Part shown: piece by piece, positions 54,840 through 63,621 of the stretch
Layout: each line of letters begins with the position of its first letter
How positions within the stretch are numbered: position 1 is the first letter of the stretch
Assembly (NCBI RefSeq): GCF_001194135.2
Contig: NC_069010.1
Location: 9,251,577-9,315,576 of the forward strand
From: Octopus bimaculoides
Lineage: Eukaryota
DNA: 64,000 nucleotides
Reading direction: 5' to 3'
Program-made: the position numbers and the translations under genes
Notes under the pieces: generated by a model
Told to the model about the DNA's origin: nothing
Database searches by the model: none
Seen by the model: only the letters and a program-made list of their open reading frames with translations

Positions 54840-55125
54840 ATTACACCCACACACACACACCACATATCTGCCCCTCTGCTCTACAGAGTCTCCTGGTCTG
54901 CCTTTCACACACACACACCACACAAATTATATGTACATGTGTGTAAGTTGTATTGACATGTATATACATATCCACATACACACATGCATGTGTTGTATAT
55001 ATACATACATATATTTTGCTGTTTTACATCTGCGTTTGTATGAGTGTCAGAGACGGAGATGTATCAGTGTAGCCACATTTGTTTCAAAGTTTTTACTGAC
55101 CAAGATGTTCTTTTATATATTTCAG

Positions 55126-55536
55126 ATGGCTACGGCAACAAGAAGTATAACTGCTCTACTGCTGATCGTCAGCCTCTTCTGTTTTGTTGCTGGCTGGAAA
55201 AGAACATGCACTTGTCCCTCCACAGTGGTCCAGCCTGCCAACAAACAGAACCCAGTTTCCAGTGATGTCCCCATTGTGAGGAATGTTCTAGACCAGCTGT
55301 CATTGTGTCCATGGAAGATGGAAATGGATTTTGACCAACATAGAATGCCAGCCAGTTTGATCTATGCCAAATTGCAAACATCAGCCTACTGCAACAACAT
55401 GGAACGACAATGCATGGCTGTTACAGAAACAGTCAATGTCACTGTACGATGCTCAGACAGCAGATGTGTGACATGCACCGAAGACATCCCCATCGCATTT
55501 GTATGTGCCATGCGGCATGTAGTTGTAATTAACTAA
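55126..55536 (+). CDS. Secreted 136-aa IL-17-like (cystine-knot) protein, divergent
   Basis: The ATG directly follows a branch point (TACTGAC) and a ttttatatatttcag acceptor. Hydrophobic signal peptide 1-23. The motif SLCPWKMEMDFDQHRMPASLIYAK resembles the IL-17 RSLxPWxYxxxxDxxRxPxxIxEAxC motif. Nine mature Cys; N-glycosylation site N104-V-T. Confidence 0.75.
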   Translation: MATATRSITALLLIVSLFCFVAGWKRTCTCPSTVVQPANKQNPVSSDVPIVRNVLDQLSLCPWKMEMDFDQHRMPASLIYAKLQTSAYCNNMERQCMAVTETVNVTVRCSDSRCVTCTEDIPIAFVCAMRHVVVIN

Positions 55537-56151
55537 GGAAGTTTCTACCAGAGGGTCATGGTTATCTACTGCCAATGTTGTCATTTCCATTTATGGTAGT
55601 TCTACCCAAGACAGCAGACATGTTTCTCTTCCAAGAATGCAAGCCACGATAAGAACTATTTATCAATTAATTTATTAATTACTATTTTCAAATGATATAT
55701 ATTTACAAAAAGGAAAAGGTTTTTAGTGATTTGTAATGAACTCCTATAAAGACTTCAAATAACTTTGAAAGATTTATTCTAAACAGTTGTCACTAGGTAT
55801 TTGTTTGCTTTCTCTCAGCTAAGAATGGAGAGTTTAATTAAATATTTATTGCATACATTAGTTAGTATGCAGCTCATTAATTCCACTATTTATATCTTTC
55901 ATTTACACACAAAACACCACACATACATGCATGCACACACACACCTATGAAACCACTCAAACATGTACATATATTTATTTTTACACAGAAATGCAGAGTT
56001 TTTAATTTATTTTATACCCCATATACCTATACATACAATATAATATGCGTGCACACACGTTTATTTCCTCAAGATGCACATATTATCTATTTATTTATTT
56101 CAACACACACAAACACACATTTATTTATTTATTTTCATATATATATATATA

Positions 56152-56197
<46 letters not shown>

Positions 56198-56220
56198 CAC
56201 ACACACACATGCACATACAT

Positions 56221-56445
56221 ACACACATAAGGATGTGAACACACAATTATTTATTTTCAACCTCCCCACCATATATTTATATATATACACACACACACAC
56301 ACACATAAGGATGTGAACACACAATTATTTATTTTCAACCTCCCCACCATATATTTATATATATACACACACACACACACACATAAGGATGTGAACACAC
56401 AATTATTTATTTTCAACCTCCCCACCATATATTTATATATATATA
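56221..56445. repeat. 78-bp tandem repeat, ~3 copies
   Basis: TAAGGATGTGAACACAC recurs at 56228, 56306 and 56384. Confidence 0.9.
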
Positions 56446-62030: not shown

Positions 62031-62524
62031 GCACGGATAATTAGGTAAAAATCATATAAACTAATTATTTTTGGAGAAAAATTTGAAAAGTTGAGAAATA
62101 TTTATGTCTACATAAAATGACATCCGAGATCTTGTTAAGTAAAACTTTTTTTGTCAGCACAGAGTATATTGATCAATTTTTTAATGCATAATTTAGTTTC
62201 TGCTTTGTGTATTGTATAGTGTGGTTTCCTTTATAATGAACCAATCTAGACTGAATTCTTTGTTGCACATTTTTGATTTATTAATGTGGGTAGCTAGTGC
62301 AGTTGTATTTTTTTGTTTCTTGATTAAATAAATAAATTTGTGTGGCCCCTATATCTTCTCTTAAAGTCAGTCGTACTTCCAGAGTTGAAACCTCAACTTT
62401 ATGTATGACATTTCCCCTTAAACAGAATCCCTTTAAGGGACATAATTCCTGGTTATGGCAATTGCATCTTTTATTTCCATGCTTCACCTTTATATTTTTA
62501 ATATCAGGATTATTATTATTATTA

Positions 62525-62957
62525 TGCCCCTGGGAACTCCTCTATGCTGATGACCTTGCACTAATTGCTGAGTCACTATCAGAACTAGAAGTGAAGTTTC
62601 AGGTGTGGAAACAAGGATTAGAATCGAACGGCCTTAGTGTCAACCAAGCTAAAACCAAAGTCCTAATAAGTAGGAAAGCAGACAAACCACAAACCCCTTC
62701 AGGTAGATGGCCCTGCTCGATCTGTAGAAAAGGCAAAGGTAGAAACTCCATAAGATGTACCCAGTGTAATCCATGGACACATAAGAGGTGCAGCAATATC
62801 AAAGAAAGGCTAACTAGGAAGATAGTTTTTGTATGTGGCAGATGCTCAGGAGCAATAAACACTGAAAATGTGCAGAGAACAACTTCTGCCACATTCCAGG
62901 GAGAAAAACTAGACATAGTTGATAGCTTCCGCTATCTTGGTGACCAAGTCAGTAGCG
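62525..62957 (+). mobile_element. 5'-truncated RTE LINE: RT YADD motif, PHD-like finger, FRYLG; runs into N gap
   Basis: PWELLYADDLALIAES...KTKVL...CSIC..CTQC..HKRC..CGRC...VDSFRYLGD. Confidence 0.88.
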
Positions 62958-63621
62958 NNNNNNNNNNNNNNNNNNNNNNNNNNNNNNNNNNNNNNNNNNN
63001 NNNNNNNNNNNNNNNNNNNNNNNNNNNNNNNNNNNNNNNNNNNNNNNNNNNNNNNNNNNNNNNNNNNNNNNNNNNNNNNNNNNNNNNNNNNNNNNNNNNN
63101 NNNNNNNNNNNNNNNNNNNNNNNNNNNNNNNNNNNNNNNNNNNNNNNNNNNNNNNNNNNNNNNNNNNNNNNNNNNNNNNNNNNNNNNNNNNNNNNNNNNN
63201 NNNNNNNNNNNNNNNNNNNNNNNNNNNNNNNNNNNNNNNNNNNNNNNNNNNNNNNNNNNNNNNNNNNNNNNNNNNNNNNNNNNNNNNNNNNNNNNNNNNN
63301 NNNNNNNNNNNNNNNNNNNNNNNNNNNNNNNNNNNNNNNNNNNNNNNNNNNNNNNNNNNNNNNNNNNNNNNNNNNNNNNNNNNNNNNNNNNNNNNNNNNN
63401 NNNNNNNNNNNNNNNNNNNNNNNNNNNNTGATTGCTTTATCAAGAAAGTCCGGCTTAATAGACTGGTAGTAATTAATAATTACTAATGTCAAATTGTATA
63501 AAGTGAGTTTTCCGTTTTCTTATTCAACGAGCAGAACCAAGTTCTGATGTCCCCTGTGGATATCCAAAGGTGGAAGGTCTGCATTTCTTTTAACACAAGG
63601 GACAATTCTGTCAATGATAGA

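What the first reader, a model, noticed from the sequence alone, without database searches (positions are those of the whole stretch)
55126..55536. Divergent IL-17-like protein that appears to have lost both partners of one knot disulfide
Seen: signal peptide, then KR, CxCP, SLCPW...DQHRMP...YAKL...YC...QC...C..C..C...IAFVC. Established: IL-17 has AxC...C and C-terminal CxC, paired as C71-C121 and C76-C123 in mature human IL-17A. Invertebrate IL-17s often keep an extra Cys in SLCPW. Here the AKC Cys is Leu83 and the first CxC Cys is Phe125, i.e. both members of the same bond, while C89/C127 and C61/C96 remain. Extra Cys 28, 30, 109, 114 and 117 give an odd total of 9, suggesting an interchain bond. 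Octopus IL-17-like genes are known to be expanded and mostly clustered; this copy is alone in the window, next to NF1. Inference: a new structural subclass of cephalopod cystine-knot ligand.
Basis: partly seen in the sequence, partly recalled or inferred. Interest (0 to 1): 0.7.

Follow-up and report, generated by a model that had tools for sequence, protein, structure and literature searches.

The report
Octopus IL-17 lacking one knot bond
This is a real, selectively maintained gene for a very divergent secreted IL-17-type cytokine in Octopus bimaculoides whose sequence cannot close the usual two-disulfide ring of the IL-17 cystine knot; the same odd cysteine pattern is shared with cuttlefish orthologues, one of which is already named IL-17-11.

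Summary
The ORF at 55126-55536 (+) is exactly as described: 136 aa, signal peptide, CxC, SLCPW, AKL, FVC, and nine Cys in the mature chain. It is single-copy in a 2.34-Gb Octopus bimaculoides genome, about 14 kb downstream of NF1 and far from the roughly 38-gene IL-17 cluster.

It falls below Pfam's IL17 threshold (17.6 vs 24 bits). Homology is still secure:
- Cuttlefish-type orthologues pass the threshold.
- A profile-profile comparison with canonical cephalopod IL-17s gives 94% probability.
- An AlphaFold model (pLDDT 74) hits only IL-17 structures at the top of Foldseek.

A second octopus species keeps the frame, with 90% nucleotide identity, no indels and dN/dS 0.28. All nine Cys and Leu83 are invariant across six sequences; position 125 is Phe in five and Tyr in Sepiella.

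Leu83 firmly replaces knot Cys II. Phe125 as Cys V is the better-supported register (hhalign, block scoring, published motif), but HMMER and MAFFT prefer a two-residue shift. In either register only one strand 2-strand 4 disulfide is possible.

The subfamily is not new as a gene: Sepiella japonica "interleukin 17-11" is an orthologue. Knot-pair losses also recur in other IL-17s. Verdict: a real, unannotated octopus member of a known family with a variant disulfide framework, of modest interest.

The parts
55120..55125 (+). Splice-acceptor-like 'tttcag' directly before the ATG. It suggests an upstream non-coding exon.
   Evidence: Seen in the sequence. The same YAG|ATG junction is present in the other octopus (L031) and in the cuttlefish-type contig L039. 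Other octopus IL-17 paralogues show '...LQ|M'. Use of the site for splicing is inferred, not shown.
55126..55536 (+). Complete coding sequence (136 codons plus TAA) of a divergent IL-17-like protein, P0001.
   Evidence: for the ORF. dN/dS 0.28 against P0002. Single copy in the genome. hhalign 94.3% to canonical cephalopod IL-17s. AF2 and Foldseek give the IL-17 fold.
55126..55194 (+). Signal peptide, residues 1-23 (MATATRSITALLLIVSLFCFVAG), with cleavage predicted after VAG.
   Evidence: Read by inspection: Arg6, a hydrophobic core, and small residues at -3/-1. AF2 run 1 made residues 4-22 a helix. The same layout is seen in orthologues. No signal-peptide predictor was available.
55207..55215 (+). 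N-terminal Cys28-Thr-Cys30, a CxC specific to this subfamily.
   Evidence: Invariant in all six subfamily sequences. The N-terminal regions of the other cephalopod IL-17s do not align with this stretch, so no counterpart can be identified there.
55300..55353 (+). IL-17 motif 1, SLCPWKMEMDFDQHRMPA, including Cys61 (knot Cys I of invertebrate IL-17s).
   Evidence: Aligns to 'SPWRYELDRDLNRLP' of IL-25 and 'SPWNYTVTWDPNRYP' of IL-17F. CPW is the invertebrate form of SPW (PMC8353272, PMC4517768).
55372..55374 (+). Leu83 (TTG) at the position of knot Cys II, the 'AKC' Cys.
   Evidence: Aligned to the Cys of 'ARC' in IL-25 and 'AQC' in IL-17F and to the Cys of octopus paralogues. Leu is invariant in the subfamily.
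55390..55392 (+). Cys89, knot Cys III.
   Evidence: Aligned to 'LGC' of IL-17F. The spacing from Leu83 is +5 in cuttlefish-type orthologues and +6 in octopus.
55411..55413 (+). Cys96, knot Cys IV, the expected partner of Cys61.
   Evidence: Invariant column in every alignment with canonical IL-17s. The I-IV pairing follows the literature on invertebrate IL-17s and is inferred here.
55450..55476 (+). Hairpin-tip Cys cluster, Cys109-x4-Cys114-x2-Cys117.
   Evidence: Invariant in the subfamily. hhalign aligns Cys109 with the loop Cys of canonical octopus IL-17s and Cys114 with their conserved Tyr. AF2 places residues 109-113 in the loop between strands 3 and 4.
55498..55506 (+). Phe125-Val-Cys127. 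Phe most probably sits at knot Cys V, and Cys127 at knot Cys VI.
   Evidence: For this register: hhalign; block score 9.0 vs -4.1; E-D-I-P-I-A-F-V-C-A matches the published motif Ex[VI][APT]V[GA]CTC[VA]. Against it: HMMER and MAFFT put Cys127 at Cys V.
55837..55842 (+). Candidate polyadenylation signal ATTAAA, about 300 nt after the stop codon.
   Evidence: The only AATAAA/ATTAAA within 560 nt after the stop. It sits inside a block conserved in the other octopus. Its function is inferred.

Best explanation
The ORF is a functional, single-coding-exon gene of Octopus bimaculoides. It encodes a secreted IL-17-fold cytokine of an old coleoid-wide subfamily whose cuttlefish orthologue is 'IL-17-11'.

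The protein keeps the IL-17 scaffold: the CPW...D..R.P motif, four long strands, and the invertebrate I-IV disulfide Cys61-Cys96. One of the two strand 2-strand 4 disulfides that close the cystine-knot ring is gone. Cys II has become Leu83 and Cys V has become Phe125, so a hydrophobic pair replaces the bond. Only Cys89-Cys127 (III-VI) can tie those strands, so a closed knot ring cannot form.

The canonical '+2' Cys is also lost (Thr85). Four new Cys appear: Cys28 and Cys30 at the N-terminus, and Cys114 and Cys117 at the hairpin tip next to the retained loop Cys109.

By analogy with the N-terminal-Cys to hairpin-loop-Cys interchain bonds of human IL-17A/F, these five Cys most likely bridge the N-terminal arm to the hairpin tip within or between protomers. 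The odd count would leave one Cys for a symmetric interchain bond in a homodimer.

The dimer would signal through the octopus IL-17-receptor/SEFIR pathway.

Shown here: the ORF, purifying selection, family homology, the Cys positions and the predicted fold. Inferred: disulfide pairing, dimerisation, receptor use, immune role and transcription in octopus.
For: ORF and Cys positions.

Functional constraint:
- dN/dS is 0.28 overall and 0.23 in the domain, with Fisher p = 2e-4.
- The CDS is 90% identical with no gaps, against gapped flanks at 69-80%.
- The gene is single-copy.

Homology:
- An exhaustive HMMER search finds P0003 at E = 2e-11.
- P0003, P0008, P0010 and P0011 score 25-31 bits on Pfam IL17, against a cut-off of 24.
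- P0011 is named 'interleukin 17-11 [Sepiella japonica]'.
- A subfamily profile hits IL-17F (1jpy) at E = 0.0025 in the PDB.
- hhalign against 24 canonical cephalopod IL-17s gives probability 94.3%, E = 9.8e-8.
- The subfamily forms a clade with 98/95 support.

Fold:
- AF2 gives pLDDT 74, with the core at 88-91.
- Foldseek ranks 1-39 are all IL-17 family chains, with probability about 1.0 and TM 0.47-0.57.

Cys register:
- Leu83 = Cys II and Cys89 = Cys III.
- Phe125 = Cys V and Cys127 = Cys VI.
- P0005 shows the same Thr/Phe replacement in an unambiguous alignment.
- The extra 'SC' Cys and the tail Cys of the cuttlefish-type proteins are present or absent together.

Pathway: SEFIR-domain loci are present in the genome.
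Against: - P0001 itself fails Pfam's IL17 gathering score (17.6 vs 24 bits, E = 0.005), and only profile positions 1-57 align.
- HMMER with an octopus-paralogue HMM, and MAFFT, both put Cys127 on Cys V. The cuttlefish-type proteins do carry a literal C-S-C there.
- The AF2 model used an alignment of IL-17 homologues, so the fold result is not independent of the homology call. With a two-sequence alignment AF2 gave nothing (pLDDT 36).
- Model coordinates could not be inspected, so no Cys-Cys distances support the proposed pairing.
- No transcript evidence for the octopus gene was obtainable. The exact protein is absent from the 15-billion-protein collection, and no annotated Octopus orthologue appeared. 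The contigs carrying P0002 are genomic.
Confidence: 0.75

Rival explanations
1. Same gene and same fold, but the C-terminal register is shifted by two residues. Cys127 is knot Cys V, and Met129 (Cys in cuttlefish types) is Cys VI. Octopus would then have lost one Cys from each ring disulfide (II and VI), which are not the two partners of one bond. The survivors, Cys89 (III) and Cys127 (V), would form a hybrid bond. Cuttlefish types would keep a canonical III-VI bond and an orphan Cys V.
For: - An HMM built from 33 octopus paralogues aligns 'IAFVCAMR' to 'vataCvca', and 'AFICSC' to 'taCvCa'.
- MAFFT on 33 sequences does the same.
- Pfam aligns the cuttlefish-type proteins to profile position 79 at the second Cys of 'CSC'.
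- With the Cys columns included, block scores for the cuttlefish types are about equal in the two registers.
Against: - hhalign chooses the other register.
- Without the Cys columns this register scores 10-13 BLOSUM units worse in all three sequences tested.
- It matches only about 3 of 10 positions of the published motif Ex[VI][APT]V[GA]CTC[VA], against about 7 of 10 for the other register.
- It requires different disulfide wiring in orthologues that share nine invariant Cys.
Confidence: 0.18
2. The ORF is a decaying or never-expressed relic, an unannotated pseudogene-like copy with no function in octopus.
For: - It is absent from annotated Octopus proteins in the collection.
- It scores below the Pfam threshold.
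- It is isolated between microsatellite-rich, repeat-rich sequence.
- No transcript was seen.
Against: - The frame is intact in two octopus species with no indels and dN/dS 0.28 (p = 2e-4).
- All nine Cys are conserved between octopods and cuttlefish types.
- The signal peptide and the acceptor|ATG junction are conserved.
- The Sepiella orthologue was deposited from a study of IL-17 transcripts.
Confidence: 0.05
3. It is not an IL-17 but a member of another cystine-knot growth-factor family (neurotrophin-, Spaetzle- or PTTH-like), and resembles IL-17 only by convergence.
For: - The direct Pfam hit is weak.
- BDNF/NT-3 appears at Foldseek rank 40 with similar TM.
- The Cys framework is non-canonical.
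Against: - The IL-17-specific motif CPW-x6-D-x2-R-x-P is present.
- Orthologues pass the Pfam IL17 threshold and nothing else.
- hhalign gives 94% to IL-17 paralogues.
- Foldseek ranks 1-39 are all IL-17 chains.
- The only other Pfam hit, UPF0731, is below threshold at E = 0.011.
Confidence: 0.02

Closest known systems
Sepiella japonica 'interleukin 17-11' (P0011, NCBI nr; from Zhou et al. 2023, Fish Shellfish Immunol 140:108903, which was not readable here)
   Same: Orthologous subfamily (clade support 98/95). It has the same nine Cys, Leu at Cys II, an aromatic residue (Tyr) at the Cys V position, an N-terminal CxC and a hairpin Cx4Cx2C.
   Different: - It is only about 31% identical to P0001.
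- It has two further Cys ('CSC' and a tail Cys) and a basic C-terminal tail (RRRKRK...) that octopus lacks.
- The spacing from Leu to Cys III is one residue shorter.
- It passes the Pfam IL17 threshold (25.1 bits), whereas the octopus protein does not.
Canonical Octopus bimaculoides IL-17-like proteins: the chromosome-1 cluster of about 38 genes, and the C27 pair
   Same: CPW motif, the I-IV Cys pair, the loop Cys, a signal peptide, a single main coding exon and the IL-17 fold.
   Different: - Canonical copies have eight domain Cys, including II, '+2', V and VI.
- They score 45-58 bits on Pfam IL17.
- They lie in a tandem array at C1:24.96-25.72 Mb.
- The candidate lacks II, '+2' and V, has four new Cys, scores 17.6 bits and lies alone on C30.
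Human IL-17A, IL-17F and IL-25 (solved structures 1jpy, 7uwj and others)
   Same: They are the best sequence and fold matches in the PDB. A homodimeric cystine-knot-like cytokine acting through SEFIR receptors is the working model.
   Different: Chordate IL-17s keep II-V and III-VI and have Ser at I and IV. The candidate does the converse: it keeps I-IV and III-VI and drops II-V. Sequence identity is 12-19%.
O. bimaculoides paralogue P0036 (C30:4.84 Mb) and the tandem IL-17 P0005 (ENA contig, host unknown)
   Same: Both are IL-17 domains above the Pfam threshold that lack both members of one ring disulfide. P0005 has Thr/Phe at II/V, the same pair and the same Phe as the candidate. P0036 lacks III and has Ser at VI.
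   Different: Neither is sister to the candidate in the tree. Neither has the N-terminal CxC or the hairpin Cx4Cx2C. P0005 is a two-domain protein.

Membership tests
IL-17 family (Pfam PF06083) | Score at or above the Pfam gathering threshold (24 bits) | tested here: not met
   P0001 scores 17.6 bits, E = 0.005, over profile positions 1-57/81. P0002 scores 15.3 bits. The orthologues P0003, P0008, P0010 and P0011 score 25.1-31.1 bits, and P0001 links to them at E = 2e-11. Membership therefore holds transitively.
IL-17 family (Pfam PF06083) | Motif 1: [CS]PW followed by D-x-N/H-R-x-P and A-[KR]-C | tested here: met
   SLCPWKMEMDFDQHRMPASLIYAKL aligns to IL-25 and IL-17F. Only the final Cys is replaced, by Leu.
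IL-17 family (Pfam PF06083) | Four conserved ring Cys (II, III, V, VI) forming the II-V and III-VI disulfides | tested here: not met
   Position II is Leu83. Only one Cys (Cys127) lies in the V/VI region. hhalign and block scoring make position V Phe125.
IL-17 family (Pfam PF06083) | Invertebrate-type I-IV Cys pair (CPW Cys plus strand-3 Cys) | tested here: met
   Cys61 and Cys96 are in invariant columns. The pairing itself follows PMC4517768 and was not measured here.
IL-17 family (Pfam PF06083) | IL-17 three-dimensional fold | tested here: met
   AF2 pLDDT 74 with four long strands. Foldseek ranks 1-39 are all IL-17 chains. Caveat: the alignment given to AF2 was made of IL-17 homologues.
IL-17 family (Pfam PF06083) | Secreted dimer that binds an IL-17R/SEFIR receptor | not testable with these tools
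   A signal peptide was seen by inspection. SEFIR loci exist in the genome. No binding or dimer data are available.
Cystine-knot growth-factor topology | A ring closed by two disulfides and threaded by a third | tested here: not met
   There is only one Cys on the strand-2 side (Cys89) and one on the strand-4 side (Cys127). At most one ring disulfide can form, in either register.
Coleoid 'IL-17-11' subfamily (defined here) | W-x0-2-CxC after the signal peptide; Leu at II; aromatic-x-Cys at V-VI; Cx4CxxC at the hairpin tip | tested here: met
   All these features are present in all six sequences. The clade has 98/95 support.

The most novel reading that the evidence does not exclude
The coleoid 'IL-17-11' lineage is a structurally distinct class of IL-17-fold ligand that has existed since before octopods and decapodiforms split. 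The knot ring has been replaced by a Leu/Phe hydrophobic contact. A new Cys network (N-terminal CxC plus hairpin-tip Cx4CxxC, with an odd total) builds a covalent dimer or oligomer of different geometry from IL-17A/F. This could come with a different receptor mode or a non-immune role.
Probability: 0.25. Interest if true: 0.55.

Novelty: new variant of a known kind. Interest (0 to 1): 0.38.

Why it matters
**Gene counts.** It adds an apparently unannotated IL-17 paralogue to the octopus repertoire. Threshold-based domain counts (31-36 genes in the literature) miss the most divergent members.

**Dispensable knot bonds.** Each of the three knot disulfides can be dropped in some IL-17 lineage:
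- I-IV in chordates.
- II-V in this subfamily and in P0005.
- III-VI in the paralogue P0036.

This bears on how much the knot matters for folding, stability and receptor binding of IL-17 cytokines.

**A natural test case.** The subfamily is a conserved natural example for studying a ring-less IL-17 fold, with its own Cys network.

The result does not open a new kind of biology.

Tried and rejected
- **AF2 with the two octopus sequences only.** pLDDT was 36 and the model was unusable, so it was not sent to fold search.
- **Direct phmmer of P0001 against the PDB.** Only IL-25 appeared, at E = 0.12, which is not significant alone. The subfamily profile was needed.
- **Using Logan contigs as transcript evidence.** L031 and L032 are colinear with the genome through the acceptor site and end in microsatellites. 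They are genomic, not cDNA.
- **Looking up the run accessions in the literature** to name the source species of P0002 and P0003. Nothing relevant was found.
- **Reading Zhou et al. 2023 and Hymowitz et al. 2001.** Neither paper is held.
- **Settling the register from the Cys IV to Cys V spacing.** The count is 28 or 30 residues, against 29-33 in canonical copies, so it is uninformative.
- **The 'GLY' versus Tyr(-11) anchor.** It is ambiguous between the cluster and the C27 genes.
- **The idea that the ORF is a 3' exon of NF1.** Rejected: the exon opens with its own Met and signal peptide, and the cuttlefish orthologue is a stand-alone 164-aa protein.
- **The Pfam UPF0731 hit** (16.4 bits against a cut-off of 27). 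Treated as Cys-pattern noise.
- **The 'KR' after the signal peptide as a processing site.** It is absent in the cuttlefish types, so no weight was given to it.
Full report
**1. The observation**

Window 55126-55536 (+) is an uninterrupted ATG-to-TAA frame of 136 codons. The product is MATATRSITALLLIVSLFCFVAGWKRTCTCPSTVVQPANKQNPVSSDVPIVRNVLDQLSLCPWKMEMDFDQHRMPASLIYAKLQTSAYCNNMERQCMAVTETVNVTVRCSDSRCVTCTEDIPIAFVCAMRHVVVIN.

Cys lie at 19 (in the signal peptide), 28, 30, 61, 89, 96, 109, 114, 117 and 127, which gives nine in the mature chain. The ATG is directly preceded by 'tttcag', a splice-acceptor-like site.

**2. Where it lies**

The window is C30:9,251,577-9,315,576 of a 2.34-Gb assembly. 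The length of contig C1 equals that of the record carrying NCBI-named Octopus bimaculoides IL-17-like proteins, so the genome is O. bimaculoides.

A six-frame scan with Pfam IL17 finds 44 places above the family cut-off:
- About 38 lie in one array at C1:24.96-25.72 Mb.
- Others lie at C27:3.675-3.677 Mb (two), C30:4.84 Mb, C1:183.2 Mb (two) and C1:79.1 Mb.
- The candidate scores only 18.4 bits in this scan, below the cut-off.

The candidate is single-copy.

Upstream on the same strand lie exons of neurofibromin. The Sec14-PH region is at 687-1570 (E = 1e-41 against human NF1). Later exons match human residues 2307-2627, up to about window 24.6 kb, and further NF1-like exons run to about 41.1 kb. 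The IL-17-like gene therefore sits roughly 14 kb beyond NF1. It opens with its own Met and signal peptide, so it is not an NF1 exon.

**3. Is it a gene?**

A 5.8-billion-protein word search found one close relative, P0002 (87% identity), on 1.1-kb Logan contigs. These contigs are colinear with the window across the acceptor site and end in microsatellites. They are genomic DNA of another octopus, not cDNA.

| Region | Nucleotide identity | Gap columns |
|---|---|---|
| CDS | 90% | 0 |
| 5' flank | 69% | 6 |
| 3' flank | 80% | 116 |

Nei-Gojobori counts give dN 0.069 and dS 0.246. The ratio is 0.28 overall and 0.23 over residues 59-136. Synonymous versus non-synonymous changes differ with Fisher p = 2e-4.

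An exhaustive HMMER scan of 1.8 billion representatives added P0003 (E = 2e-11). A profile search then added P0010 and P0011. P0011 carries the NCBI name 'interleukin 17-11 [Sepiella japonica]'. It belongs to a published study of twenty IL-17 transcripts in that cuttlefish, known here only from a citation, because the paper itself is not held.

P0003, P0008 and P0010 are close to P0011, and I take them to be decapodiform; this is an inference.

Across the six sequences, all nine mature Cys, Leu83, Trp24, the SLC-W motif, and Asp68, Asp70, Arg73 and Pro75 are invariant. Position 125 is Phe in five and Tyr in Sepiella. The acceptor|ATG junction is also shared.

A frame kept with this pattern between octopods and decapodiforms is a functional gene. 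From general knowledge, that split is a few hundred million years old.

Transcription in octopus itself could not be tested. The exact protein is not in the 15-billion-sequence collection, and no annotated Octopus orthologue turned up. The gene therefore appears to be unannotated.

**4. Is it an IL-17?**

Taken alone, P0001 fails Pfam's threshold: 17.6 bits against 24, with only profile positions 1-57 aligned. The case rests on several converging results:
- The decapodiform orthologues pass the threshold at 25.1-31.1 bits and hit no other family.
- The subfamily profile hits IL-17F (1jpy) at E = 0.0025 in the PDB, followed by IL-25 and IL-17A.
- hhalign of the subfamily against 24 canonical cephalopod IL-17s gives probability 94.3%, E = 9.8e-8, over 78 columns.
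- An HMM built from 33 O. bimaculoides paralogues scores P0001 at 23.9 bits.
- AlphaFold2 on the mature chain, with a 33-sequence cephalopod alignment, gives mean pLDDT 74 (blocks of 88-91 in the core) and four long strands.
- Foldseek against the PDB returns only IL-17 family chains in ranks 1-39 (IL-25, IL-17A, IL-17F; probability about 1.0, TM 0.47-0.57). BDNF/NT-3 follows at rank 40.

The fold result depends on an alignment of IL-17 homologues, and a two-sequence alignment gave nothing (pLDDT 36). It corroborates the homology rather than proving it independently.

In a maximum-likelihood tree the six sequences form one clade (98/95 support) on a long branch, apart from the C1 cluster.

**5. 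The cysteine register**

The N-terminal half is unambiguous. 'SLIYAKLQTSAYC' aligns with 'DLYHARCLCPHC' of IL-25 and 'EVVQAQCRNLGC' of IL-17F. Leu83 therefore stands at knot Cys II and Cys89 at Cys III. In the decapodiform proteins the Leu-to-Cys spacing is exactly the canonical +5; octopus has one extra residue. Thr85 replaces the '+2' Cys of the CxCxxC motif of canonical octopus copies. Cys61 (CPW) and Cys96 occupy the I and IV positions, which invertebrate IL-17s use for the third knot disulfide (PMC4517768, PMC8353272).

The C-terminal half is contested.
- HMMER with the paralogue HMM, and MAFFT, place Cys127 on Cys V and Met129 on Cys VI. Met129 is Cys in decapodiforms, which read F-I-C-S-C.
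- hhalign places Phe125 on Cys V and Cys127 on Cys VI. It also places Cys109 on the canonical loop Cys and Cys114 on the conserved Tyr eleven residues before Cys V.

I scored the two registers as ungapped blocks against ten diverse canonical windows anchored on Cys V:

|---|---|---|---|---|
| P0001 | 9.0 | -4.1 | 2.2 | -11.0 |
| P0003 | 2.9 | 1.2 | -3.9 | -14.7 |
| P0011 | 4.7 | 4.9 | -1.8 | -11.0 |

- The family-wide motif 2 of Huang et al. is YExxxEx[VI][APT]V[GA]CTC[VA]. Under the shift about 3 of 10 match.
- The two extra Cys of the decapodiform proteins (the 'SC' Cys and a Cys in the basic tail) are present or absent together. This fits an additional pair laid over an otherwise identical framework.
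- Phe (TTT) and Tyr are single-base neighbours of Cys codons. This is weak evidence but consistent.

The structural consequence is the same either way. There is one Cys on the strand-2 side and one on the strand-4 side. At most one inter-strand disulfide can form, and no closed knot ring.

**6. How unusual is this?**

- P0005 is a tandem two-domain IL-17 on a 248-kb ENA contig of unknown host. It scores 80 bits on Pfam IL17 and has Thr at position II and Phe at position V in both domains, in an unambiguous alignment. It is not sister to the subfamily, so the same pair seems to have been lost independently.
- The paralogue at C30:4.84 Mb (P0036) lacks Cys III and reads A-C-T-S at V-VI. It has lost the other ring bond.
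- Published surveys already report 4 to 8 domain Cys in mollusc IL-17s.

What is specific to this subfamily is the combination: I-IV kept, II-V lost, '+2' lost, the loop Cys kept, and four new invariant Cys (CxC after the signal peptide, and Cys114 and Cys117 at the hairpin tip).

**7. Likely mechanism**

Shown here:
- The signal peptide was judged by inspection only.
- The IL-17 fold was predicted by AF2 and matched by Foldseek.
- Purifying selection was measured against P0002.

Inferred:
- Cys61-Cys96 and Cys89-Cys127 are intrachain bonds.
- Leu83 packs on Phe125 where the II-V bond used to be.
- The five remaining Cys (28, 30, 109, 114, 117) tie the N-terminal arm to the hairpin tip. This mirrors the N-terminal-Cys to loop-Cys interchain bonds of human IL-17A/F (general knowledge). 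One Cys would be left for a symmetric interchain bond, because the count is odd in both lineages (9 and 11).
- Signalling would go through IL-17R/SEFIR proteins, for which four SEFIR loci exist in this genome.
- An immune or mucosal role is the default by family. The Sepiella study concerned the response to Vibrio harveyi, judging by its title.

**8. Verdict**

This is a real, conserved, apparently unannotated octopus member of a cephalopod IL-17 subfamily with a variant disulfide framework that cannot form the knot ring. It is a new variant of a known kind, not a new class. A cuttlefish orthologue is already named, and knot-pair loss recurs in the family. Interest is modest.

Noticed in passing
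window 687-41105 (+): This is the 3' part of the neurofibromin (NF1) gene. Exons encode the Sec14-PH region (687-1570, E = 1e-41 against human NF1) and run on to at least human residue 2627 (about 24.6 kb). Further NF1-like exons extend to about 41.1 kb. A poly-Asn/Ser-rich insert in the ORF at 40488-41105 looks cephalopod-specific.
   Followed up: partly
G000:C30:4839484-4839720 (locus L043; protein P0036): This IL-17 paralogue lies on the same chromosome and has lost the other ring disulfide. Cys III is missing ('VHCRTNTWDNGTC') and Cys VI is Ser ('AVACTS'). UniRef labels the protein 'SUEL-type lectin domain-containing', which looks like a mis-annotation.
   Followed up: partly
L042:10001-10942 (protein P0005, ENA ERZ25084522, 248-kb contig): This is a tandem two-domain IL-17 protein (313 aa, 80 bits on Pfam IL17) from an unidentified host. 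Both domains have Thr at knot Cys II and Phe at Cys V, the same replacement as in the octopus gene and apparently independent of it.
   Followed up: partly
G000:C1:183234286-183254938 (L044, L045) and G000:C1:79106163 (L046): These are three very divergent IL-17 paralogues lacking the PW of the CPW motif ('SVCNTSCKV...', 'ELCPSKTV...'). The C1:183 Mb pair is a recent duplicate.
   Followed up: no
window 62336-63469 (+), and 6391-7152 (+): The first is a retrotransposon fragment: a reverse-transcriptase C-terminal part with a YADD motif (RVT_1, 28.9 bits, just under the cut-off) followed by a PHD finger, interrupted by an assembly gap. The second ORF, inside an NF1 intron, looks like another retroelement remnant but has no Pfam hit.
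   Followed up: partly
window 56135-56428: A tandem repeat of about 75 nt, three copies, reads '...[26 protein letters not shown]' in one frame. It lies 600 nt downstream of the gene among TG/TA microsatellites.
   Followed up: no
window ~14790-15560, ~45420-46030, ~46420-47260, ~62960-63430 and several shorter runs: These are runs of N (assembly gaps or masked stretches). None touches the IL-17-like ORF.
   Followed up: no
P0003, P0008, P0010 and P0011 (C-terminal tails): The decapodiform orthologues carry a strongly basic tail (NHRKRKRNGQMRR...DPCN) ending in an extra Cys, which octopus lacks. It could be a proprotein-convertase site or a matrix- or heparin-binding tail.
   Followed up: no
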